Below the pieces are notes generated by a model, which was given only the letters and a program-made list of their open reading frames with translations, ran no database searches and was not told the DNA's origin. From positions 186,001-250,000 of the IMG/VR virus record IMGVR_UViG_3300010938_000951: a stretch of 64,000 nucleotides of DNA; one strand, 5' to 3'. The position numbers and the translations under genes were made by a program. Shown piece by piece: positions 30,705 through 62,846 of the stretch; within the stretch, counting starts at the first letter, position 1; every line of letters begins with the position of its first letter.

Positions 30705-31724
30705 ATGCAATTACCTAATCGTTTATCTCAGTTGTTACAGAAACAAACTGATAGATTATTAAAAGACCTATTGTCTGAGAATCCTGATGTTCTTAAGAGT
30801 TATGTTAATGGTGGTCTTGCTGCCGTCGGTGCAGTATTAGCGCCAATTAATGTGTTTATGAGGCATTTATTAACAGTTCAGGGACTAGATCCTGATGCTG
30901 TGCCAGGAGAGAAACAAAGGGCATTGATACGGGCAGCTTTCAATAGTACATTTGAAAATAATCACGAAAAAGATTATGATGATGATTATGATGTTTCTTG
31001 GGTTCATAAAAAGTATAATTCTATAAAAGACAAATTCAATGTCACAGAAGATAAGTTTATGGCCCTAACTGATTTGTCAAAATTAGATAATGCCCCTCCA
31101 GTTTTGACAAAAGTAAAATTTGATGAGCTGGTTCAAGATATTAATCCAGTAGCTCCCGAGTCTGAGAAGCGCGAATTGCCTTTAGTTAAAACATATATGC
31201 AAGATGAAATTCAGGCGCTTAAAGAATTTGTGGAGACTATGGATAAACACAGCCAAAAGGCTGGAATTAAAACATCTACTAAAAAAGCCAATAAGGGTAA
31301 GAGGCCAGGCGCTAGAGTTCGTAGGGTAACCAGCTCTACAACCATCAAAGATGAACCAACAACATTAGAAGTGAAGTCTGATCGTGTTGTGCGACCATCA
31401 TCTAAGAAATTGCCAGCTCGTAATTTGAAAGATTTAACCGCACAAAAGAAAGAGAAAGTTAAAGCTATTAAAGAAGCAACCCCTGAATTTCAAGCAGAAT
31501 TAAAAGCAAAATTAGCAAAAGCAACAGAACTAACTAGTCTTATGATAGAAAAGGGACTTTGCAGAGCAGATGATCAATCTCGTAAAGATCAAATTGAATC
31601 AATGTTGTCTTGGACAGATAATAATTTTGATGCACTAGAAAGAGTAATTAACAAATATTCTCCTACTAAAGATGCAGTGGCTGAGAATAAATTCAAGGGC
31701 TCTTTTAGAAGAGTTCAGAAATAA
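30705..31724 (+). CDS. hypothetical protein with a C-terminal domain paralogous to the scaffold C-terminus
   Basis: 20/52 gapless identity with aa 1134-1185 of the 59151 protein. Confidence 0.8.
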   Translation: MQLPNRLSQLLQKQTDRLLKDLLSENPDVLKSYVNGGLAAVGAVLAPINVFMRHLLTVQGLDPDAVPGEKQRALIRAAFNSTFENNHEKDYDDDYDVSWVHKKYNSIKDKFNVTEDKFMALTDLSKLDNAPPVLTKVKFDELVQDINPVAPESEKRELPLVKTYMQDEIQALKEFVETMDKHSQKAGIKTSTKKANKGKRPGARVRRVTSSTTIKDEPTTLEVKSDRVVRPSSKKLPARNLKDLTAQKKEKVKAIKEATPEFQAELKAKLAKATELTSLMIEKGLCRADDQSRKDQIESMLSWTDNNFDALERVINKYSPTKDAVAENKFKGSFRRVQK

Positions 31725-46282: not shown

Positions 46283-47053
46283 ATGAAACTCCGTGAACTG
46301 CTTCAAGAAATGAAGAGAGTCCAGGTAAATATAGGCGCATCTACGCCGTATATTTGCGGAGGTACGCCCAGAGATAAATACATGGGCAAATTAGAAAATA
46401 TTGCAGACATAGATATGACTACTGGAGATAAAACTGTAGACTATCTATCTCAAGAATTTTATTTAACATTACGTAAAAGGTATAACGTTACTAGAAAAAC
46501 TATGGATGATGGACATAGTACGATTTTCATTGGCAGTTTGAAAATTGATTTCTCTTCAAATTTTATTGTACCAAATATTGATCAAGAGCTGGCAAAATTA
46601 GGAATTACTAAACCAACAGATATGCAACGCGAAATGTTTAGTCGTGATTTTACTTGCAACTCATTATTGCTTACTACAGATTTAAAACAAGTTTTAGACC
46701 CAACCAAAAGAGGATTCAAAGATATTAAAGATAAGAAAATACGTACTTGTTTATCACCAGAAATTACATTAACATCTAATAGAAATAGGGTGGTAAGGGC
46801 TATTTATTTAGCTTGTAAATTGGATTTCGATATAGACGATTCAATTATAGATTTTGTGCGCCAACATCCAGATTCTGTAAAAATCTCAACTGAGAAATCT
46901 ATGAATGATAAGTTGAATGAAGCGTTCTCTAGAAATCCAGAGAAGGCTGCAGCACTTATTACACAAATGAATCTCTGGAGCTATATTCCAATTACAGAAA
47001 AAGTTTATCCATATTATATAAAACAAATTAAAGGTAAAACTAATGTCGGTTAA
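46283..47053 (+). CDS. class II CCA/poly(A)-type nucleotidyltransferase (head-neck domains) with variant templating motif
   Basis: GGTPRD, DID, SRDFT.N and DP..G..D; SNRNR in place of EDxxR. Confidence 0.88.
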   Translation: MKLRELLQEMKRVQVNIGASTPYICGGTPRDKYMGKLENIADIDMTTGDKTVDYLSQEFYLTLRKRYNVTRKTMDDGHSTIFIGSLKIDFSSNFIVPNIDQELAKLGITKPTDMQREMFSRDFTCNSLLLTTDLKQVLDPTKRGFKDIKDKKIRTCLSPEITLTSNRNRVVRAIYLACKLDFDIDDSIIDFVRQHPDSVKISTEKSMNDKLNEAFSRNPEKAAALITQMNLWSYIPITEKVYPYYIKQIKGKTNVG

Positions 47054-47795
47054 TAAGCAAGCCTATTTTCAGGGTGGTGGCGGTGTAAATGAGCCAAAAC
47101 CAAAGAAGAAGAAATATAAATCTGATCCTGCTATTGTAGTTCAGCCAAGGTTCAAAGAGCCGTTTTATCGCAATTACGATTTATACAATGTTCCGGGCGA
47201 GCACGGCCCAGGCGCCGGTTGGCACGACATGAAAAAGTATAAATCGGTTTCAGAATTTCTAAAAGCCAAAAGAAAGAAGCTGAAGGACAAGTACAAAGCC
47301 GACGACTCTTGGATTTTGGATGATAATTCAAAAACGAAGAAAAATCCAAATATTGAAGCTCGTGCCGCCGTTTTTGAGGAAATTATTAAAAACGCTATCG
47401 ATTTTCCAATTGATGATCAGATTGATGAGGGGTTGGGCGGACCATTTGAGACAGATACTGTTAATGATAATCCAGTAGGATATGCTAATTTAACAGGCGG
47501 AAAATTAGATGAATATTTGCCAAAAAATGATTTTGAAGGTAAATTACCAACTAATTTAGATTTTGGTAGGGACTATGTTGAGAGGCAAGAGCCTGGTCGT
47601 GGGCTATTAGATGATATTATTGAAAAACTTTTCAATAAGTATTTACCAGCATCGGAAACAGATTTATTTGGATTACCAGATGGTATTGAACCAAATTCTG
47701 ATTTAGATGCAGAACAGACAATGGATGTAGAAGAGCCATTTACTGGAACATCCGATATTGGCACTGATATGTATAAGGATAATTGGATCGTCTAA
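47043..47795 (+). CDS. hypothetical protein, largely disordered, sharing an N-terminal peptide with the scaffold repeats
   Basis: NKQAYFQGGGGVNEP is identical to a 59151-protein segment. Confidence 0.8.
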   Translation: MSVNKQAYFQGGGGVNEPKPKKKKYKSDPAIVVQPRFKEPFYRNYDLYNVPGEHGPGAGWHDMKKYKSVSEFLKAKRKKLKDKYKADDSWILDDNSKTKKNPNIEARAAVFEEIIKNAIDFPIDDQIDEGLGGPFETDTVNDNPVGYANLTGGKLDEYLPKNDFEGKLPTNLDFGRDYVERQEPGRGLLDDIIEKLFNKYLPASETDLFGLPDGIEPNSDLDAEQTMDVEEPFTGTSDIGTDMYKDNWIV

Positions 47796-49587: not shown

Positions 49588-50091
49588 CCCAGCCTGTTTT
49601 TGAGTATTTCTAGTGGGCCTAATTACTATTTCAGGCTTATCATGTGGACAATATCCAAAAAATCCTTTAGCACAGTTGCAATTATAGCATAATAATTGAT
49701 ATTCTTCTTTAGGAAAGTTATTTTTAATTAGCCAACGGTATAATTTACCACCAGATTTCTTACCATTTTGTCGTCGATCTTCTGCACCATCATTATTTAT
49801 GTGATCAATAGTTAGAAATTCTAAGGTAGTTTCCCCACAACAAGTGCATTTGCCACCATAGGCTTCTATAATTTTTTGTTTAACACTAAGATCATAAACT
49901 CTTTGTTGTTCTCTTATTATTTCTTTTCTATTTGTATATCTTCTTTTGCTATATTCTTTACAACAAAAGATACACATATATTTAGCCTGTTTAATATCGG
50001 AAGGTCTAGTATTATCTTTAGTTAGGCTTTTGAAGCATACAGTGCAGCTTTTGCCTTCAAAACTATATTGTCGTTTTTTCTTATCTGTCAT
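49585..50091 (-). CDS. His-Me finger (HNH-like) endonuclease with N-terminal zinc finger, inverted
   Basis: CTVC and CIFC; YGGKCTCCGE..LTIDHINNDG..YQLLCYNCNCAK. Confidence 0.88.
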   Translation of the reverse strand: MTDKKKRQYSFEGKSCTVCFKSLTKDNTRPSDIKQAKYMCIFCCKEYSKRRYTNRKEIIREQQRVYDLSVKQKIIEAYGGKCTCCGETTLEFLTIDHINNDGAEDRRQNGKKSGGKLYRWLIKNNFPKEEYQLLCYNCNCAKGFFGYCPHDKPEIVIRPTRNTQKQAG

Positions 50092-50117
50092 GGGTATATT
50101 TCAGAATATATCCATGA
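50088..50117. promoter_or_regulatory. palindrome TCATGGGTATATT-tcag-AATATATCCATGA containing both divergent start codons; candidate bidirectional promoter
   Basis: 13-bp arms with one mismatch; G(A/G)TATAT lies 14 nt before each ATG. Confidence 0.7.
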
Positions 50118-51991
50118 ACAATGATACTTATAAAGAAATGTTTTATAGGTTTAAGGATAAGCTAGCTAATCTTGATCCGGTAGAATTTTGCCAGAAACAT
50201 TTAACACTTGAAGGAGAGCCATTTTCTCTCGTAGGCAACGGGTATAAACCTTTCAGCGATATCTATAGATACATTGGAATTAAGGCATTAGAAAAAGATT
50301 CTAAACCAGTTATTCTAGTAAAGGGACGTCAGGTAGGTGCTACTACCATGGCAAGCGCCCTTGAAATGTATTTCATGGGCTCTGGTTTATTTGGAGATGG
50401 ATTCCGTCCACCAATTCGTGTTATTCATGCTTTTCCTCAATTAGAATTAGCGGCAGCTTATTCAAAAACTAAACTCAATCAAATGATTTCTCAGGCTAAA
50501 ATCCCTGAGGGAGCCGTAGAAAATAAAGCATCTCGTCCAAAGTCTTTCATGCAGCAATTGCTTGATACTACGACTGCTACTAATGACTCTTTACATTTTA
50601 AACAATTCTTGGGCGGAAATCACTTGTGGATTGAATCTACTGGTGTAGATGCCGACAGAATCATGGGTCGTACCGCTGATATCATATTTTTTGACGAGGT
50701 ACAGAAAACTACCAGTGTAGCTATTGGAAACGCGCTTAAAATTTTAACCAACGCCAAATATGGTAAGCCAACTAAAGGCGTACAAGTATTTTTTGGAACG
50801 CCACGTCGTAAGGGATCTGATTATCATAAGATGTGGCAATCATCATCTCAGCAGTATTATTATCTTGGATGCGAAAAATGCGAAAAGCATTTTCCTCTTT
50901 ATACTCCAGGTTCTGATGATTGGGAAAAAGTTTGGATTCACGGTATGATTGTTAAATGTACCCATTGTGGTCATGAACAAGATAAACTACAAGCACAAGA
51001 ACGTGGTAAGTGGGTTCCGCTAAAAGATCCAAACGATCCAGATTGCGCAATGGTTGGGTTTCATATTAACCAACTTTACATGCCAAAATTTACACGAGAA
51101 GATATTGAAAAAGAAAAGCCTGGTAAACATCCGATCAACACAGAGCGCGTTTTTCAAAATGAGGTTCTTGGAGAGTTTTATCAAGGTGATGCTACCCCAA
51201 TGTCTCCAGAAGACATTCGTGTAAATTGTGCCGATTTCGAAAGAAAATTTAGCCCTCGTATTTTGCCAGCTAAAGGTGTAACGCAACAATTAACTGTACT
51301 TGGAATCGACTACGGTGCACGTTCAGATTTGGAACAACTAGCAGACCCAGAAAGAGTAAGACCAGCAGGACAATCTTATAGTACAGCAGTTGTATTACAA
51401 ACAAAAGGCCCAAGTATACTATCAATTGAGTTTGCTACCAAATTTAAACGAAATGACATAGAAAGCAAAAAAGGTATAATTGATCAGTTGATGAGACAGT
51501 ACAGTATACAATTGGCTATTGGAGACATTGGTTATTCTAATGACTTCTCATCTCTATTGCATAATACATACGGAGATAGATACTTAGTGTCTCGTGCTCA
51601 TAATAAAGTTAATGAGCATGTTAAGTTCAATCATGAAGCTTTTCCAAAAGAAATTGTTTTTGAAAGAGATTTTTATATTAGTGAACTTTACGATCAAATG
51701 AAAAAAGGATTAGTTAGGTTTCCATATGGCGATTATGAGAAAATCGCATGGCTTATTGATCATTGTTGTAGTATGGAATTAAAACCATCTATTTCTAAAT
51801 ATGGAGATCATACAGTACATTATGTTAAAGGCGGCACTCCAAACGATGGATTTATGGCATTATTAAATGCTTATTTGGCCTATAAATTCCTGGTAAGTCG
51901 AGGGTTTACAAATAATAATCCAACATTACACAATACTAAAAACTTGACGAAACCTATGGTAATTACTGGCTATGTACCTAGGAAGTTCTAA
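50114..51991 (+). CDS. terL: terminase large subunit
   Basis: VKGRQVGATT, FFDEVQ, FGTP, CEKC/CTHC, GIDYG, DIGY and NDG..ALLNAY. The start is ATG 50114, not 49946. Confidence 0.92.
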   Translation: MNNDTYKEMFYRFKDKLANLDPVEFCQKHLTLEGEPFSLVGNGYKPFSDIYRYIGIKALEKDSKPVILVKGRQVGATTMASALEMYFMGSGLFGDGFRPPIRVIHAFPQLELAAAYSKTKLNQMISQAKIPEGAVENKASRPKSFMQQLLDTTTATNDSLHFKQFLGGNHLWIESTGVDADRIMGRTADIIFFDEVQKTTSVAIGNALKILTNAKYGKPTKGVQVFFGTPRRKGSDYHKMWQSSSQQYYYLGCEKCEKHFPLYTPGSDDWEKVWIHGMIVKCTHCGHEQDKLQAQERGKWVPLKDPNDPDCAMVGFHINQLYMPKFTREDIEKEKPGKHPINTERVFQNEVLGEFYQGDATPMSPEDIRVNCADFERKFSPRILPAKGVTQQLTVLGIDYGARSDLEQLADPERVRPAGQSYSTAVVLQTKGPSILSIEFATKFKRNDIESKKGIIDQLMRQYSIQLAIGDIGYSNDFSSLLHNTYGDRYLVSRAHNKVNEHVKFNHEAFPKEIVFERDFYISELYDQMKKGLVRFPYGDYEKIAWLIDHCCSMELKPSISKYGDHTVHYVKGGTPNDGFMALLNAYLAYKFLVSRGFTNNNPTLHNTKNLTKPMVITGYVPRKF

Positions 51992-52068: not shown

Positions 52069-53943
52069 ATGGCTGGTATTAAAAAATCGGGATTAGGAGA
52101 TCATCCGTCCTTTTCAGCAAAGTTCTTACAGGGCAGATCCACCACCCCTCAAGTAAGTGCTATTATGGCTCAGGGTGTTTCTGGAGAAAGAAGAGTTATT
52201 CTTTCAGACGAAGTAGACCAAGGATATTTTAGAGACGGTTCTGGGCCAAGTTTAAATAAAATGGCACTAAATTCTCCCACAAGTGCTTCAAATGTAGTCT
52301 CTTCAGTGGGTTTCAAGAAAAATGCTCAAGTAGTTTCTTCAGTTGGAGGAATGTTTCGTGGTATTCATGGAGATTCCGTTAAGCAAACTCCTGAAGTATA
52401 TTCCCCTCTTTGGCTTAATAGTAATCTAAACCTTCCCAGGGACCGTGCAACAATCAATGCATGGTGTCGTAGCTTTTTTGCTTTAAATCCATTTGTACAC
52501 AATGCTATTAGTTTACATAGCACTTATCCTATTAGCAAGCTTTCTATTAAATGTCCAAACAAAGATATTGAAAAATTCTTTGATGATATGATTGAAGAAA
52601 TTGATTTAATGAATATTTGCGTACAAATTGCCCAAGAATATTGGCTTTTAGGAGAAGCATTTGTTTATGCAGAATTAGATGAAGGTAAAGGCAAGTGGAG
52701 TCGCCTACACATTCAGAATCCAGATTTTATGCTTGTCAAACGTACGGTTGTAGCAAGCGAACCAATCATCATGCTTCGTCCTGATGAAAACCTCAAAAAA
52801 ATTATTTTCTCAAATCGTCCAACTGATATTGAACAACGTAAACAATTAAATCAACACATCATTGATTCTGTTAGACGTGGTGAAAATATTCCACTAGACA
52901 ATTTCCACGTATCACATTTGGCTCGTCGTATTAGTCCATACGAAATCAGAGGCACAGGATTACCTGTTTGTATTTTCCGTCAGTTAATGTTATTCGACAA
53001 ATTGCGTGAATCTAAATATGCACAGTCTGATAATATGATCAATCCATTGACTTTGGTTAAGATTGGTTCGGCTGATTATAAGCCAACTTTTGCTGACCTA
53101 GAAGCTTGGAGAAGTGTATTTGAAGAAGCGCAGTACGATAAAGACTTTAAGATATTTACCCATGAAGGAGTAGCGGTTGAAAGAGTAGGTTGGGGACAGG
53201 GAATCTATGATATCTCTGGAGATATTACTCAGCTACTTAAAGAAATTTTTATTGGGTTATTCGTACCACCTGTTATGATGGATGGTGGCGATACTACCAC
53301 TTATGCTAATGCTGGTGTAGCTTTGGACGTTCTTCGTCAGAGGTACATGCAGTTCCGTAACATGATGTCCATTTGGTTAAAGAATAAGATTTTTGCTCCA
53401 ATCTCCAAAATTCAAGGGTTTTATGACTACTCTGGTGGAGAGAAACAACTTATTGTTCCTGAAATTGATTGGAATCACATGTCATTATTTGATGCTGGAG
53501 ATTATATCAATAGTTTAATGACATTATCTCAAGGACAAGCGGATCAAAAGAGAGTATCTATTCATACTCTTTATCGTTCATTGGGTCTTGAGTACGAAGA
53601 TGAAGTACGTAAAATGCGTAAAGAAAATATTCAAAATGCAATTGCTAAGAAAGAAATTGCCGCGTTAGATCAAATGGATCTAAATGCTCTTCGTGCTTTG
53701 GATGATGAGGATGAAATTCCAGAACCAAAACAACCGGGTGCTGGACAAGAACAACCAGTACCAGGAGAGATGCCAGGAGGAGCACCGGGTGGATTACCAG
53801 ATTTGGGTCTACCAGGCGGTGGCCCTCCACCACCTCCACCACCAGGTGGCGGTGGACCTCCACCACCACCTCCTCCGCCACCAGAAGGCGGTCCACCAGG
53901 CGGTGGACCTCCAGCAGGCGGAGCACCTCCACCAGCTCCATAA
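52069..53943 (+). CDS. portal protein with Pro/Gly-rich C-terminal tail
   Basis: Follows TerL; WCRSFF..NP.V.NAI, HLARR.SPYE.RG..LP and PLTLVKIG portal-type motifs; GAGG SD. Confidence 0.85.
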   Translation: MAGIKKSGLGDHPSFSAKFLQGRSTTPQVSAIMAQGVSGERRVILSDEVDQGYFRDGSGPSLNKMALNSPTSASNVVSSVGFKKNAQVVSSVGGMFRGIHGDSVKQTPEVYSPLWLNSNLNLPRDRATINAWCRSFFALNPFVHNAISLHSTYPISKLSIKCPNKDIEKFFDDMIEEIDLMNICVQIAQEYWLLGEAFVYAELDEGKGKWSRLHIQNPDFMLVKRTVVASEPIIMLRPDENLKKIIFSNRPTDIEQRKQLNQHIIDSVRRGENIPLDNFHVSHLARRISPYEIRGTGLPVCIFRQLMLFDKLRESKYAQSDNMINPLTLVKIGSADYKPTFADLEAWRSVFEEAQYDKDFKIFTHEGVAVERVGWGQGIYDISGDITQLLKEIFIGLFVPPVMMDGGDTTTYANAGVALDVLRQRYMQFRNMMSIWLKNKIFAPISKIQGFYDYSGGEKQLIVPEIDWNHMSLFDAGDYINSLMTLSQGQADQKRVSIHTLYRSLGLEYEDEVRKMRKENIQNAIAKKEIAALDQMDLNALRALDDEDEIPEPKQPGAGQEQPVPGEMPGGAPGGLPDLGLPGGGPPPPPPPGGGGPPPPPPPPPEGGPPGGGPPAGGAPPPAP

Positions 53944-58989: not shown

Positions 58990-59145
58990 ATGTTTATTAA
59001 ACACGGTGATGGAAAAATACTAAACGTTGTTGATAGCGAAGAATTAACTGAAGAACAAAAGAACGCTGTCAAGAAGGTTTCTAAAGAGTTCGTCAAGCAA
59101 TCTGACGAGTCAACTGATTCTTCTAAAAAGAAGTCAGGGAGCTAA
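58990..59145 (+). CDS. 51-aa small protein not in the ORF track (MFIKHGDGKILNVVDSEELTEEQKNAVKKVSKEFVKQSDESTDSSKKKSGS)
   Basis: GGAGAG SD; ends 5 nt before the protease ATG. Confidence 0.7.
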   Translation: MFIKHGDGKILNVVDSEELTEEQKNAVKKVSKEFVKQSDESTDSSKKKSGS

Positions 59146-59150
59146 TATAC

Positions 59151-62100
59151 ATGACCATTATTAAATTAGGCGAAGCTCACGAGATTAAATTGGAAAGCAT
59201 GGAATCATGTCTTCCAGAATTGAGTGCTGATGTCTTAGAGAACTTTAGGAAATTTGCTGCTAATCTAAAGAAGATTGCACCTAAAGCAGAAGACTTTCTT
59301 TATTTTTCTGCTGTCATGATGCATGCCGCAGAAGCATCTGCATTAAACGAAGATGGTACACCAAAATTAACACTTAAAGGTGAGCCAGTACAAGTTGGAT
59401 GGGATACTAGCGGAGGCACATGGAAGTGGATTAGCAATGATCCAAGTATTCGACCATATAAAAATTCTAATGGCGATATATTTCCAGAAGCCGAATTAAC
59501 CAAAGCTTATAAAAAATGGAAGCACAAGCCTCTTTGCGTGGATCATAAATCAAGTTCAGTAGACCACGTTAGAGGCTTTATTGTTGATACTTATTATGAT
59601 CGCAATCTCAAGAGAGTAATTGCATTATGTGCCTTAGATAAGGCCGGATTCCCTCAATTAGCCAGACAAGTAGCTACTGGCGTTTCAACTTGCGTATCAA
59701 TGGGTACAGCAGTTGGTAGGGCAATTTGCTACGATTGTGGTAGAGTCGCTCGTGCAGAGCAGGACTTCTGCAATCATATGAAAAACAAGACTTGCTACGG
59801 CGAAATCAACGTAGACCTTAATCCAATTGAGTTGTCTATCGTTGTAAATGGTGCTGATCCTAGAGCCAACATCAAAAACATCATCGCCGCAGCTAACACC
59901 ATGAATACGTACCTTGAAAATCGTGCTAAGGAACTAGAAAAACTTGCCGATCTCAAGTTTCATGCTACTATTGGTGTAGATGACCCACAAGGTCATGAGG
60001 GTGGCGGTTCTGCAACTTTCAATGTTCAAGCAAATGACATTGACAAGTTCAAAACTGATTTAGATGAAGCATTTAGGAAAGTTCAAGAGTTTAAAAACGT
60101 AAAAATTTCTGAACTAGATACTAATTCTTCAGCATCTAATCAATCGTCGGGTTCGATTGCCATGGATGAAGGCGCACCCACGGATTCTGGATTGGCTCTC
60201 CAAACTCCGCAAACTAACAGGTTTGCATCCGCAGATGTAGAGGCGGAATCATTGGCTGAGCTTCAGCAAGTTACTGCATCAATTGAAGCAACGTTAAGTC
60301 AAATGAAAAAGAGCTTGGATAAGTTAGCTAAAACTACTTCTACAAAAACACAAGAGGAAAATATGTCTGGATCAAAAGAAATTAATAAGCAAGCTTATTT
60401 CCAGGGCGGCGGTGGCGTAAATGAGCCAACTCCAGGTCAAGTTAAGTATCCAAAAGACGGACTCAATGAGCAGCTTCGTGAGAACGAGGATAAGCACATG
60501 GTGGGTCAGCCTCCTTTCCCTGAGGTAGGTCCAGTCGATGGTATGCACCCTTCACCAGCTTCGGCTGATCCTTCTGGGGAGTTAGAGCGTAAGAAGATGC
60601 TCGCTCGTGCAGAAGCAGAAGAGCGTGCTCTTAAGCGTAATGCCATTGTAAATATGGTTAAGGATACACTAAAGAACAAAGAAGCCTACTGGCAAGGTGG
60701 TGGCGGTGTTAACGAGCCAACTCCAGGTAAGGCAAAGTATCCAAAGGATAAACTAAACGAAGAACTTCGTGATTACGAAGATAAGCAGATGGTTGGTCAA
60801 CCACCATTCCCTGGCGTTGGTCCAGTTGATGGTTTGCATCCATCTCCATCTTCAGCAGATCCAAAAGACGAATTAAAGCGCAAGCAAATGCTCGCACGCG
60901 CACAACTACGTGCAAGATTCGTTAAGGCTGCAAATAATGATGGAACTCAAAACAAAGCAAAGAGCGCTTGGGAAGTATTCCTAGGTGATAAGCTATTGTT
61001 AACTGCTTCTGTTGATGAACTATCCGGAGGCAATACTGCAGTTCTATATGATTCAATTGCAACCAAAGAATTTGGTACTAAGTTAATTGAAAAAGTTAAG
61101 GTACAAGGCGCTGATGCTGTATCTAAACTAATCAAGAAGGCACAAGGCGCTCCTCCAGCTCCTCCTCCAGGTGACCCATCTAGCGCAGCTCCTCCAGCCG
61201 ATCCAGGCGCAGGCGCTCCAGATGCTGGTCCTCCAGCAGAAGATACGGGTGGTTCTGGCGATCCAAAGCAAACTGCCGTCGAACTTTCTGAAAAAGTAAG
61301 AGACCTAAGCTCTGATCTAGTCGAAGCTGTTCGTGCTTTAACTGGCGAACAAGCTGAGATGGGTGGTCCAGAAGCTGGTGGTGTTGGTGGTCCTGCTGGT
61401 GGTCCAATGGCCGCTGATGACCAAGATGCTCGTAAGAAGAAGGATGACAAAGAATCTACCGCTTCTGATAGCTTCAGTGCTAATACTCTTAACACTTTAA
61501 GAAAAGAACTTAATGGCGCACTAACTCATGCCATGAAAGAATCTATTGCGGAACTTGCTGAGCACAAGCAAGAACTAGATATGATTGCTGGTATGTATGA
61601 CAAGGGTGCTGTAACTCCATCTAACCAGGAGTTTGTGGGTACTATCGTAGAAGATGCATTAAATGAAGCTAAAACTGCCGTAGCAGATGGTTTCAAACTA
61701 ATGACAGCTTTTGTTAAGTATGCTCGTGGTACTAAGGCCATTGTCAAGCGTGCTGAAATTGAATCAGAATTGCAAGCACTAGCCGAAGGAGATACCGAAA
61801 TGAGCGACAAAGAAGATAGTCACTCCGCAGACGGCGGTGACTTGATGGGACTAATTAACGACACCAATGCAGATTTGGATGCCGTTCAAGAGATGATGGG
61901 TGATGACCAAAGCCACGAAGGCAGTTTAGATGAACTTCTAGACGAACCAGTAGGCGAAGAATCACTAGGAGGTCTTGAAGGAGAGGATCTACTAACAGGT
62001 TTGGCTGACGATAACGACCTTACTTTCGAACAAGGTGAGAAAGTTCCACCAGAGTTGGCCGGAAAGAAGTTAACTATGGCATCTTATGATGATAGAGCTG

Positions 62101-62846
62101 GTCGTGCAGCCCTCAGAGCCAAGTTGGCCGCTGATGCTCTCGGCAAGGAAGAGGATGGAGAAGTCCAAGATATGTCTAAACAAAAGTTTAGTGATATGTT
62201 AGACGCTTCTCAGAAGCACACTGATGGTCAAACTGAGTTGGATGTTAAACCATCTGATAGTCTTGGATTAGTTGAAACTGTTCAAGAAGTAAACAAGGCC
62301 ATGATGGATGTTGCTAAGGCTCCACCAAAGGTTCGTAAAGAAGCAGAAGTTATTCAGAGACTTGTTTCTGAAGGTAAGCTTGATCCAAAGGACGTAGATG
62401 CTCTAGCATCCTACGGATTAGATGGCGAAGCAGTTGCTTACTGGAAGAAGTATTATGGTGAAGTTGATGGCGGAAGTGAATTTGCTAGTGAATTGGTAAA
62501 GGAACACGTCAAGTCAGCAATGGAAGAAGAGCTTAACAAGTTCCGCGTCAAGTTAGCTCGCGCATACGAACTTACCTATGACATGGTTGATCGTGGACTA
62601 TGCCGTCATGACAGAGCAACTATCTCTGATCAAGTTGACCAAATTATGAAGTTTAATGATGATGCATTCGAATCTCTAAAGAAGGTTGTTGCCCGTCATG
62701 AACCAGGTGCCCTCCGCAAGGCAGCAGGTACCATTCCACAAGTTGGTCTTAGAGTTGATGGAGAATTCTCTCCAGCTCAAGCAGTAGAGGATGACTCTTA
62801 CGCCCAGTTGTCAGCCCTCTTTGGTAACAAAAAGGGTGTGTTCTAA
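59151..62846 (+). CDS. prohead maturation protease (HK97/assemblin-fold) fused to a long scaffold
   Basis: KPLCVDH..RGFIVD, VSMG, CYDC..CNH insertion and ELSIV..GADP.A; followed by acidic/helical repeats and a hydrophobic C-terminal tail. Confidence 0.82.
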   Translation: MTIIKLGEAHEIKLESMESCLPELSADVLENFRKFAANLKKIAPKAEDFLYFSAVMMHAAEASALNEDGTPKLTLKGEPVQVGWDTSGGTWKWISNDPSIRPYKNSNGDIFPEAELTKAYKKWKHKPLCVDHKSSSVDHVRGFIVDTYYDRNLKRVIALCALDKAGFPQLARQVATGVSTCVSMGTAVGRAICYDCGRVARAEQDFCNHMKNKTCYGEINVDLNPIELSIVVNGADPRANIKNIIAAANTMNTYLENRAKELEKLADLKFHATIGVDDPQGHEGGGSATFNVQANDIDKFKTDLDEAFRKVQEFKNVKISELDTNSSASNQSSGSIAMDEGAPTDSGLALQTPQTNRFASADVEAESLAELQQVTASIEATLSQMKKSLDKLAKTTSTKTQEENMSGSKEINKQAYFQGGGGVNEPTPGQVKYPKDGLNEQLRENEDKHMVGQPPFPEVGPVDGMHPSPASADPSGELERKKMLARAEAEERALKRNAIVNMVKDTLKNKEAYWQGGGGVNEPTPGKAKYPKDKLNEELRDYEDKQMVGQPPFPGVGPVDGLHPSPSSADPKDELKRKQMLARAQLRARFVKAANNDGTQNKAKSAWEVFLGDKLLLTASVDELSGGNTAVLYDSIATKEFGTKLIEKVKVQGADAVSKLIKKAQGAPPAPPPGDPSSAAPPADPGAGAPDAGPPAEDTGGSGDPKQTAVELSEKVRDLSSDLVEAVRALTGEQAEMGGPEAGGVGGPAGGPMAADDQDARKKKDDKESTASDSFSANTLNTLRKELNGALTHAMKESIAELAEHKQELDMIAGMYDKGAVTPSNQEFVGTIVEDALNEAKTAVADGFKLMTAFVKYARGTKAIVKRAEIESELQALAEGDTEMSDKEDSHSADGGDLMGLINDTNADLDAVQEMMGDDQSHEGSLDELLDEPVGEESLGGLEGEDLLTGLADDNDLTFEQGEKVPPELAGKKLTMASYDDRAGRAALRAKLAADALGKEEDGEVQDMSKQKFSDMLDASQKHTDGQTELDVKPSDSLGLVETVQEVNKAMMDVAKAPPKVRKEAEVIQRLVSEGKLDPKDVDALASYGLDGEAVAYWKKYYGEVDGGSEFASELVKEHVKSAMEEELNKFRVKLARAYELTYDMVDRGLCRHDRATISDQVDQIMKFNDDAFESLKKVVARHEPGALRKAAGTIPQVGLRVDGEFSPAQAVEDDSYAQLSALFGNKKGVF
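60384..60902 (+). repeat. two ~76-aa coding repeats with 97-aa (291-nt) period in the scaffold
   Basis: NK(Q/E)AY(F/W)QGGGGVNEPTPG..KYPKD.LNE.LR..EDK.MVGQPPFP.VGPVDG.HPSP.SADP..EL.RK.MLARA. Confidence 0.95.

What the first reader, a model, noticed from the sequence alone, without database searches (positions are those of the whole stretch)
59151..62846. Two nested in-frame starts inside the protease/scaffold gene
Seen: GAGG-aaaat-ATG at 60363 (Met405, MSGSKEINKQAY, just before repeat 1) and AGGAG-8nt-ATG at 61800 (Met884, MSDKEDSH). Both lie at domain borders and match the SD style of real starts here. Established: lambda C/Nu3 and herpes UL26/UL26.5 make scaffold from one internal start. Inference: three co-terminal products (1231, 827 and 348 aa), a tiered scaffold suited to a very large head. 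The protease domain also has a CxxC..CxH zinc insertion beside the catalytic Ser.
Basis: partly seen in the sequence, partly recalled or inferred. Interest (0 to 1): 0.6.

Follow-up and report, generated by a model that had tools for sequence, protein, structure and literature searches.

The report
Nested starts in giant-phage protease–scaffold gene
A 1231-residue head protease–scaffold gene of an uncultured ~0.5-Mb phage carries two internal ribosome-binding sites plus start codons that evolution has kept at silent codon positions, so it very probably makes three proteins with the same tail end, a tiered form of the lambda and herpesvirus scaffold trick.

Summary
GAGG-5 nt-ATG lies at 60363 (Met405) and AGGAG-8 nt-ATG at 61800 (Met884), in frame in the ORF 59151-62846.

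From this sequence alone it is not beyond chance: 4 of 33 internal ATGs have an equally strong SD. Comparison of 88 non-redundant homologues (44-90% identity, on 430-510 kb phage contigs) is what separates the two sites from the rest:
- Of 23 conserved Met columns, only Met405 and Met884 are preceded by an SD.
- The two SD codons, E402 = GAG (80/83; usage 24%) and G880 = GGA (63/65; usage 26%), are the two strongest synonymous-site signals in the gene.
- The SD stays when the encoded residues change. At site 2 it also stays when its codon phase changes.
- The mRNA around Met405 is the least structured place in the whole gene.

Site 1 is family-wide. Site 2 marks one large clade. Another clade instead has an AAGGAGA-ATG just before repeat 2.

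An unlinked head-module protein begins with the same MS..NKxAYFQGGGG motif as the Met405 product.

The N-terminal domain has the T4 gp21/herpes assemblin fold. Its CxxC..CxH insertion is shared with phage G gp19.

No protein or RNA data exist, so the three products remain inferred. I rate it a new variant of a known kind.

The parts
59151..62846 (+). Full-length ORF, 1231 aa: protease, linker, two repeats, helical/low-complexity scaffold part, conserved C-terminal domain. Its own SD is AGGGAG at 59136-59141, 9 nt before the ATG.
   Evidence: An uninterrupted ORF is present in all 106 unique full-length homologues.
59250..59900 (+). Head maturation protease domain (about residues 34-250), T4 gp21 / herpesvirus assemblin fold. 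His132 and Ser183 are invariant.
   Evidence: PHROG 18299 'head maturation protease', E 1e-12. 36% identity to phage G gp19. AF2 model pLDDT 71.7; VIA-align Z 9.8 to T4 gp21 5jbl (rmsd 2.9, 132 aa) and Z 7-9.3 to herpes proteases. Invariant residues.
59727..59777 (+). CxxC...CxH insertion (C193, C196, C207, H209), a putative zinc site after Ser183.
   Evidence: C193, C196 and C207 are invariant and H209 is at least 90% conserved in 43 diverse homologues. The same motif is in phage G gp19. Metal binding was not tested.
60120..60197 (+). Unexplained nucleotide-level constrained element (codons 324-349) in the protease-scaffold linker, 165-245 nt upstream of the Met405 start.
   Evidence: A328 GCA 53/54, S332 TCG 28/37 (usage 7%) and G347 GGA 40/42 rank 3rd to 5th of 693 columns, behind only the two SD codons. 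No conserved RNA structure, no Rfam hit, no conserved alternative-frame ORF, no sigma-70 match above chance, and the motif is not repeated elsewhere in the 267-kb record.
60354..60365 (+). Internal translation initiation region 1: SD GAGG (60354-60357), 5-nt spacer, ATG Met405 (60363-60365). Predicted product 827 aa.
   Evidence: ATG in 106/106 homologues. E402 codon GAG 80/83 against 24% usage, the top of 485 columns. SD of -4 kcal/mol or better in 99% against 14% for other in-frame ATGs. Least structured mRNA position in the gene, z 3.1.
60384..60926 (+). Two tandem ~84-aa repeats (residues 412-495 and 509-592), each opening with NKxAY[FW]QGGGGVNEPTPG.
   Evidence: 74% identity between repeats.
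61787..61802 (+). Internal translation initiation region 2: SD AGGAG (61787-61791), 8-nt spacer, ATG Met884 (61800-61802). Predicted product 348 aa.
   Evidence: Strong SD plus in-frame ATG in 62/88 homologues, forming one large clade. G880 codon GGA 63/65 against 26% usage and 50/50 in the subset. GGAG is kept in two codon phases and with E/D/N/K/H/S before it.
62535..62705 (+). Conserved ~55-aa helical module (residues 1129-1185) in the shared C-terminal domain. Inferred to be the part that brings all co-terminal products into the procapsid.
   Evidence: AF2 pLDDT 81-93 over residues 1119-1179 of the C-terminal model. Shared with the C-terminus of P0123 (hhalign 96.9%, E 1.7e-10) and with phage G gp21 (74.6%, E 2.6e-5). 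The function is inferred.
47043..47795 (+). Unlinked head-module gene (P0122, 250 aa) whose N-terminus MSVNKQAYFQGGGGVNEP mirrors the N-terminus of the Met405 product.
   Evidence: Homologues in related genomes start MSxNKKAYFQGGGGVNEPTPG, MLKNKSAYWQGGGG and similar. Only three Y[FW]QG copies occur in 267 kb.
30705..31724 (+). Gene (P0123, 339 aa) whose C-terminus carries the same helical module as residues 1129-1185 of the scaffold.

Best explanation
The gene is a capsid-maturation protease fused in one reading frame to about 930 residues of scaffold or core protein, in an uncultured phage with a genome of roughly 0.45-0.5 Mb.

Ribosomes start at three places on this frame:
- the 5' ATG, giving the 1231-aa protease-scaffold;
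- Met405, giving an 827-aa product that begins with the NKxAYFQGGGG motif and repeat 1;
- Met884, giving a 348-aa product made of an acidic low-complexity stretch plus the conserved helical C-terminal domain.

All three share the C-terminal domain. By analogy with lambda C/Nu3 and herpes UL26/UL26.5, that domain would carry them into the assembling procapsid. A few protease-bearing chains would then be co-assembled with many protease-less scaffold chains and later digest them.

Shown: the sequence features, their purifying selection at the nucleotide level, the protease fold and the head-module context.

Inferred: that the sites are used, the relative amounts of the products, the capsid-targeting role of the C-terminus, and any role of the N-terminal motif.
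For: (1) Met405 is ATG in 106/106 unique homologues down to 44% identity. The upstream GAGG/AGGA persists while the encoded residues change (QEE, HEE, KEE, NEE, TEE, QEG, KED, KE, KD, RE).

(2) E402 is GAG in 80/83 against 24% gene-wide usage, the strongest codon bias of 485 conserved columns. G880 is GGA in 63/65 against 26% usage. In a stricter test on 54 sequences and 693 columns these two columns rank first and second.

(3) SD duplex energies: gene start mean -6.25 kcal/mol; Met405 -5.9, with 99% at -4 or better; site 2 -6.75, with 82% at -4 or better; other in-frame ATGs -1.64, with 14%; out-of-frame ATGs -1.53, with 13%. Of 23 conserved Met columns only 405 and 884 carry an SD.

(4) At site 2 GGAG is kept in two codon phases (GGA-GAx and xxG-GAG). 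A protein-level constraint cannot explain that.

(5) Positions 390-412 are the 12 least structured of 604 mRNA windows averaged over 42 homologues (-1.6 against -7.6 kcal/mol). Site 2 ranks 28th.

(6) A clade without site 2 has AAGGAGA-ATG directly before repeat 2, giving MKSKEAYFQGGG.... The separate protein P0122 and its homologues also start with this motif. So the motif sits next to a start codon in three independent settings.

(7) Protease fold and context. In phage G the protease gp19 (300 aa) and gp21, which carries the C-terminal module, are separate genes. So the parts can act as separate proteins.

(8) Precedents: lambda C/Nu3 (Shaw and Murialdo 1980, cited in PMC8508860); the herpesvirus protease-scaffold arrangement (PMC11565193); four nested in-frame cytomegalovirus proteins (Welch 1991, cited in PMC9732275); the T4 gene 21 Met45 second start (PMC9026906).
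Against: There is no direct evidence of translation from either internal site. No RNA run was listed, the phage is uncultured, and no proteomic data are at hand.

Site 2 is missing in about 25 of 88 homologues, so it is not essential to the family.

The window sequence also has SD-like ATGs at Met899 and Met1008 that are not supported by conservation. SD-ATG pairs therefore do arise by chance in this acidic, Gly-rich region.

Homologues are related, so the binomial-style contrasts overstate independence. The ranking against the other columns of the same alignment is the safer measure.

The scaffold role of residues 405-1231 rests on position, helicity and analogy. There is no PHROG or Pfam match.
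Confidence: 0.68

Rival explanations
1. Only Met405 is a working internal start, giving two products as in lambda C/Nu3. The GGAG-ATG at Met884 is conserved in one clade for another nucleotide-level reason, or initiates too weakly to matter.
For: Site 1 is universal and lies in the least structured mRNA region. Site 2 is confined to one clade with several losses and is only moderately unstructured, z about 1.5.
Against: G880 GGA 63/65 is the second strongest synonymous signal in the gene. Site 2 has the strongest SD of the three starts in the window, -8.8 kcal/mol. Its ATG is kept at 5-9 nt spacing while the spacer residues vary.
Confidence: 0.15
2. The SD-like sequences are not starts. They are internal anti-SD-binding sites that pause elongating ribosomes at domain borders, for example to help co-translational folding. 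The Mets are conserved for protein reasons.
For: Both sites lie at domain borders. SD-like motifs inside genes have been proposed to pause ribosomes (my own knowledge; disputed in the literature).
Against: A pause site needs neither an ATG at SD spacing (106/106 at site 1) nor an unstructured, A-rich mRNA segment. A pause also does not explain why an independent gene and a clade-specific third site place a start codon directly before the same peptide motif.
Confidence: 0.05
3. The internal SD-ATG pairs are leftovers of an old fusion of three genes (protease, scaffold A, scaffold B) and are no longer used.
For: In phage G the protease (gp19) and the protein with the C-terminal module (gp21) are separate genes. 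A fusion history is therefore plausible.
Against: Unused sites would decay at synonymous positions. Here the two SD codons are the most constrained synonymous positions of the gene across sequences as little as 44% identical.
Confidence: 0.05
4. The conservation is at the protein level. QEE|N and LAE|G would be protease cleavage sites of the T4 L/I-x-E type, and the nucleotide pattern follows from the residues.
For: T4 gp21-type proteases cut after Glu in short motifs (PMC9026906). A-L-A-E-G before Met884 fits L-x-E.
Against: Residues change while the SD stays. The codon choice is biased against the gene's own usage (GAG 24%, GGA 26%). At site 2 GGAG shifts codon phase. Cleavage sites may well coexist with the starts, but they cannot explain the silent-site signal.
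Confidence: 0.04

Closest known systems
Bacteriophage lambda C / Nu3 (and Mu I / Z): scaffold translated from an internal in-frame start of the protease gene
   Same: An N-terminal protease shares reading frame and C-terminus with a protease-less scaffold made from an internal SD-ATG. The gene lies between portal and major capsid protein genes (Shaw and Murialdo 1980, cited in PMC8508860; C-Nu3, Nu3-B and Nu3-E interactions in PMC3224144).
   Different: Lambda's C protease is of a different family (my own knowledge), whereas this one has the gp21/assemblin fold. Here the gene is about three times longer, has two conserved internal starts in this phage, and the second start sits at different places in different clades. 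No sequence similarity was found.
Herpesvirus UL26/UL26.5, and the cytomegalovirus UL80 nested family of four in-frame 3'-coterminal products
   Same: The protease fold is the same (Z 7-9.3). The logic is the same: a protease-linker-scaffold fusion plus shorter co-terminal scaffold forms made in excess (PMC11565193). Cytomegalovirus already shows more than two tiers (Welch et al. 1991, cited in PMC9732275).
   Different: Herpesviruses make the shorter forms from separate transcripts with their own promoters. Here the conserved signals are Shine-Dalgarno sites, so internal ribosome entry on the long mRNA is the simplest reading. An internal promoter is neither shown nor excluded.
T4 gp21 prohead protease, its second start at Met45 (gp21s), and the capsid targeting sequences of T4 internal proteins
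   Same: T4 gp21 is the closest solved fold (5jbl, Z 9.8). T4 gene 21 also has an internal start giving an essential shorter protein. T4 head-internal proteins carry a short N-terminal tag that takes them into the core (PMC9026906), which resembles the shared N-terminal motif seen here.
   Different: T4's protease is not fused to the scaffold gp22. The motif here (NKxAY[FW]QGGGGVNEPTPG) contains no L/I-x-E cleavage site, also occurs internally as repeat 2, and its role is untested.
Bacillus phage G gp19 (protease) and gp21
   Same: This is the closest named relative of the protease (36% identity, same CxxC..CxH insertion). gp21 shares the ~55-aa C-terminal module. Genome size is similar (497 kb).
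   Different: In phage G these are separate genes of 300 and 486 aa. In the family studied here they are one ORF with internal starts.

Membership tests
Nested protease-scaffold gene with internal in-frame initiation (lambda C/Nu3 type) | N-terminal capsid maturation protease domain | tested here: met
   PHROG 18299, E 1e-12. Fold match to T4 gp21 at Z 9.8 and to herpes proteases at Z 7-9.3.
Nested protease-scaffold gene with internal in-frame initiation (lambda C/Nu3 type) | Internal in-frame start codon with a ribosome-binding site, under selection | tested here: met
   for both Met405 and Met884.
Nested protease-scaffold gene with internal in-frame initiation (lambda C/Nu3 type) | C-terminal part is a scaffold: helical, located in the head module, removed on maturation | tested here: inconclusive
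   It lies between portal and MCP. The C-terminal 272 aa are predicted all-helical, but overall pLDDT is only 63.9. There is no match to any known scaffold family. Removal on maturation cannot be tested here.
Nested protease-scaffold gene with internal in-frame initiation (lambda C/Nu3 type) | Separate shorter polypeptide actually produced | not testable with these tools
   No RNA run was listed and no proteomic data are available.
T4 gp21 / herpesvirus assemblin-fold serine protease | Assemblin fold | tested here: met
   5jbl_A Z 9.8, rmsd 2.9 over 132 residues; 1vzv Z 9.3. The model is of moderate confidence, pLDDT 71.7.
T4 gp21 / herpesvirus assemblin-fold serine protease | Catalytic His and Ser conserved | tested here: inconclusive
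   His132 and Ser183 are invariant in 43 diverse homologues and conserved in phage G gp19. Their equivalence to the gp21 catalytic residues was not checked residue by residue.
T4 gp21 / herpesvirus assemblin-fold serine protease | Match to a curated sequence model (Pfam) or to a solved structure by sequence | tested here: not met
   No Pfam family at E up to 0.1. The profile search of PDB sequences found no protease. The relationship is visible only through PHROGs and fold.
T4-type capsid targeting sequence | Short tag at the extreme N-terminus of proteins destined for the head interior | tested here: met
   The motif starts 4-10 residues after the initiator Met in the P0122 family, in the Met405 product and in the clade-specific repeat-2 product. 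That these proteins go to the head interior is inferred from gene position only.
T4-type capsid targeting sequence | Ends in the protease cleavage motif (L/I-x-E in T4) and is cut off | tested here: not met
   The tag region contains no Glu-containing L/I-x-E. Whether it is cut cannot be tested. I therefore do not file it as a T4-type CTS; only the resemblance in position is noted.

The most novel reading that the evidence does not exclude
In this clade of ~0.5-Mb phages the scaffold is a family of nested co-terminal proteins, and the number and start points of its members evolve. One universal start lies before repeat 1. A second start lies either before repeat 2 or at Met884, depending on the clade.

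Products that begin at a repeat, and an unlinked head protein, open with the same N-terminal MSxxNKxAY[FW]QGGGG tag. That tag would serve as a targeting or processing signal for the procapsid core. The constrained element at 60120-60197 would control how much of the shorter forms is made.

Together this would be a genetically compact way to set the stoichiometry of a layered core for a capsid of very large triangulation number.
Probability: 0.3. Interest if true: 0.7.

Novelty: new variant of a known kind. Interest (0 to 1): 0.55.

Why it matters
How capsids with thousands of subunits are sized and filled is poorly understood, and none of the phages of this clade is cultured.

A protease-scaffold gene with two selected internal starts gives a concrete, testable model of a multi-tier scaffold. 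It links the lambda/Mu arrangement in phages to the multi-product cytomegalovirus arrangement, on the same protease fold.

There is also a practical consequence. Gene callers annotate one 1231-aa 'hypothetical protein' here, whereas the locus most likely encodes three proteins. The silent-site test used here can be applied to other giant-phage head genes.

Tried and rejected
- Pfam scan of the whole protein: no family.
- Profile search of PDB sequences: only a spurious coiled-coil hit.
- Foldseek against PDB: no hit at E of 0.001 or better, although gp21 and herpes proteases dominated the list. VIA-align was needed to resolve them.
- RNA runs holding the gene: none was listed.
- Complex prediction of the major capsid protein with residues 1100-1231: 'no answer', score 0.00. 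This is no evidence either way.
- Natural gene fission at the internal starts: loci whose match ended near residues 865-909 proved to be full-length ORFs with a diverged middle. Short database proteins covering residues 405-700 are fragments or frameshifted pieces with aberrant tails, apart from P0122 relatives.
- A further start at Met1008 (GGAGA-11 nt-ATG): rejected. G1003 is GGA in only 23/51 and Met is present in only 36/88.
- Met338 as a start: SD only -3.2 kcal/mol.
- Internal promoter: sigma-70-like matches are at chance level. The intergenic-enriched GATATAT motif does not occur near either site.
- The constrained element at 60120-60197: no consensus RNA structure, no Rfam family, no conserved alternative-frame ORF, and no other copy in the 267-kb record.
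- Phage G gp20 against the scaffold part: no similarity.
Full report
**What is there**

The window is bases 186001-250000 of a 266.9-kb IMG/VR virus record, estimated 62% complete. The ORF 59151-62846 (+) encodes 1231 aa.
- GAGG at 60354-60357, aaaat, ATG at 60363 (Met405).
- AGGAG at 61787-61791, 8 nt, ATG at 61800 (Met884).

The gene's own start has AGGGAG 9 nt upstream.

**Context**

Upstream lie a large terminase (49946-51991) and a portal gene (52069-53943). A major head protein lies about 10 kb downstream of the ORF, beyond the window's end (L177:10232-11245, PHROG 2522, E 3e-81).

Relatives of the 1231-aa protein are numerous: 647 hits, the best 120 all 62-93% identical and about 1200 aa long. 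Many sit on contigs of 430-510 kb, one with direct terminal repeats. No cultured phage is close. The best named hit is Bacillus phage G gp19, over the protease domain only.

**Is it more than chance?**

In this sequence alone, no. Of 33 internal in-frame ATGs, four (Met405, 884, 899, 1008) have an SD duplex of -6 kcal/mol or better.

I therefore collected 176 related loci. I extracted 106 unique full-length coding sequences (44-90% identity), aligned them, and thinned them to 88 sequences below 85% identity.

**Site 1 (Met405)**

- The ATG is present in all 106.
- The upstream GAGGAA is kept at the nucleotide level. Codon 402 is GAG in 80 of 83, although GAG is only 24% of Glu codons in these genes. 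This is the largest codon-usage departure among 485 conserved degenerate columns.
- When the residues differ (QEE, HEE, KEE, NEE, TEE, QEG, KED, and KE, KD, RE in the deepest branches), a GAGG/AGGA core remains at the same distance.
- Neighbouring codons are fixed in A-rich forms: ACA 27/27, CAA 55/55, GAA 76/77, TCA 39/40.
- Averaged over 42 homologues, the twelve least structured of 604 mRNA windows all lie at codons 390-412 (-1.6 against -7.6 kcal/mol).

**Site 2 (Met884)**

- A strong SD plus in-frame ATG is present in 62 of 88.
- Codon 880 is GGA in 63 of 65, against 26% usage.
- GGAG persists with E, D, N, K, H or S before the Gly. In several sequences it lies in the other codon phase (xxG-GAG-Axx). 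That excludes a purely protein-level cause.
- The spacer varies in length and residues, but the ATG stays 5-9 nt away.

**Unbiased controls**

- Of 23 Met columns conserved in at least half of the sequences, only 405 (99% with an SD of -4 or better) and 884 (89%) are SD-preceded. All others are at 39% or less.
- In-frame and out-of-frame ATGs elsewhere have an SD in 13-14% of cases.
- In a stricter test (54 sequences, single-step synonymous families, 693 columns) E402 and G880 rank first and second.
- Met1008, which looks similar in the window, fails: G1003 is GGA in 23/51 and Met is present in 36/88.

**Distribution across the family**

On a midpoint-rooted tree site 1 is present in 86 of 88. 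Site 2 marks one large clade, with a few losses. The deepest clade has site 1 only.

A separate clade (L083, L090, L154, L173, L174) lacks site 2. It has AAGGAGA-5 nt-ATG immediately before repeat 2, which would give products starting MKSKEAYFQGGG.... The extra start has therefore arisen at least twice, at different places.

**A shared N-terminal motif**

- The Met405 product would begin MSGSKEINKQAYFQGGGGVNEPTPG.
- An unlinked gene 12 kb upstream (47043-47795, P0122) begins MSVNKQAYFQGGGGVNEP.
- Its homologues in related genomes begin MSxNKKAYFQGGGGVNEPTPG, MLKNKSAYWQGGGG and the like.
- Only these three Y[FW]QG copies exist in the 267-kb record.

The motif thus lies a few residues after a start codon in three independent settings. 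This fits Met405 being a true N-terminus. The position recalls the T4 capsid targeting sequence (PMC9026906), but the motif lacks the T4 cleavage pattern. I do not file it there.

**The protein**

- Residues about 34-250 match PHROG 'head maturation protease' and phage G gp19.
- An AlphaFold model (pLDDT 71.7) aligns best with T4 gp21 (Z 9.8, rmsd 2.9, 132 residues), then with herpesvirus proteases (Z 7-9.3).
- Pfam and PDB sequence searches found nothing.
- His132, Ser183, C193, C196 and C207 are invariant, and H209 nearly so. Phage G gp19 has the same CxxC..CxH, so this insertion is a subfamily trait. Zinc binding is inferred.
- The last 272 residues are predicted all-helical, confidently so around residues 1119-1179.
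- The module at residues 1129-1185 recurs at the C-terminus of P0123 (30705-31724; hhalign 96.9%) and in phage G gp21 (74.6%, E 2.6e-5).
- In phage G the protease and gp21 are separate genes.

**How it most likely works**

Three co-terminal proteins are made from one frame. They share a C-terminal helical domain that, by analogy with lambda Nu3 and herpes UL26.5, takes them into the procapsid. The rare full-length form brings the protease along. The two shorter forms supply bulk scaffold.

Precedents:
- Lambda C/Nu3 (Shaw and Murialdo 1980, cited in PMC8508860; interactions in PMC3224144).
- The pan-herpesvirus arrangement (PMC11565193).
- Four nested in-frame cytomegalovirus proteins (Welch et al. 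1991, cited in PMC9732275).
- The T4 gene 21 Met45 start (PMC9026906).

The signals conserved here are SD sites in unstructured mRNA. Internal ribosome entry on the long transcript is therefore the simplest mechanism. A separate internal transcript is not excluded.

**Unexplained**

Codons 324-349 (60120-60197) hold the next three strongest silent-site signals. I found no conserved RNA structure, Rfam family, alternative-frame ORF, sigma-70 match above chance or second copy. The element lies 165-245 nt upstream of Met405 and could be a regulatory site for the shorter products. That is speculation.

**Limits**

- There are no RNA or protein data.
- The homologues are related, so I rely on ranks within the same alignment rather than on nominal probabilities.
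- The scaffold function is inferred.

Noticed in passing
window 60120-60197: A third nucleotide-level constrained element inside the protease-scaffold linker: A328 GCA 53/54, S332 TCG 28/37 at 7% usage, G347 GGA 40/42. No RNA structure, Rfam hit, overlapping ORF or promoter match explains it.
   Followed up: partly
L064, L078, L088, L135, L137, L149, L164 (homologues); query residues ~105-107: Several homologues carry an insertion of about 180-370 codons in the conserved KNSNGDIFPE motif of the protease domain. One such protein (P0097, 1565 aa) has precomputed Pfam intein and LAGLIDADG domains, so these are inteins in the head protease.
   Followed up: partly
window 58990-59145: A small ORF (51 aa, MFIKHGDGK...) with its own GGAGAG SD fills most of the apparent 255-nt gap upstream of the protease-scaffold gene. 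Its first residues resemble the family consensus start MPFIKLGE.
   Followed up: no
window 47043-47795 (P0122) and 30705-31724 (P0123): Two other genes share short modules with the scaffold gene. P0122 shares the N-terminal NKxAYFQGGGGVNEP motif and P0123 the C-terminal helical module (residues 1129-1185). This suggests shared targeting or interaction modules among head proteins.
   Followed up: partly
G000 whole record (267 kb): ARAGORN finds 65 tRNA genes in the 267-kb record, none inside the window. tRNA T-arm words dominate the intergenic k-mers.
   Followed up: no
G000, e.g. window 13624, 14301, 39352, 52016: GATATAT(A) is about five-fold enriched in intergenic DNA (22 of 42 copies). It often lies 8-24 nt before an ATG, so it may be a phage promoter or -10-like element. 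It is absent near the two internal starts.
   Followed up: partly
window 62172 (Met1008) and 61845 (Met899): Two more in-frame ATGs with SD-like sequences in the window. Met1008 is not conserved as a start (G1003 GGA only 23/51). At Met899 only 39% of homologues have an SD.
   Followed up: yes
L178 (phage G 19865-21534): Phage G gp22/gp23 downstream of the protease are annotated as a joined two-piece CDS sharing a start, that is, a programmed frameshift or similar in the head module of the nearest named relative.
   Followed up: no
G000 record: IMG/VR labels this record and some relatives 'provirus'. Yet relatives reach 450-510 kb, one with direct terminal repeats, and this record looks like a fragment of a huge lytic-type phage genome. 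The label may be an artefact.
   Followed up: no
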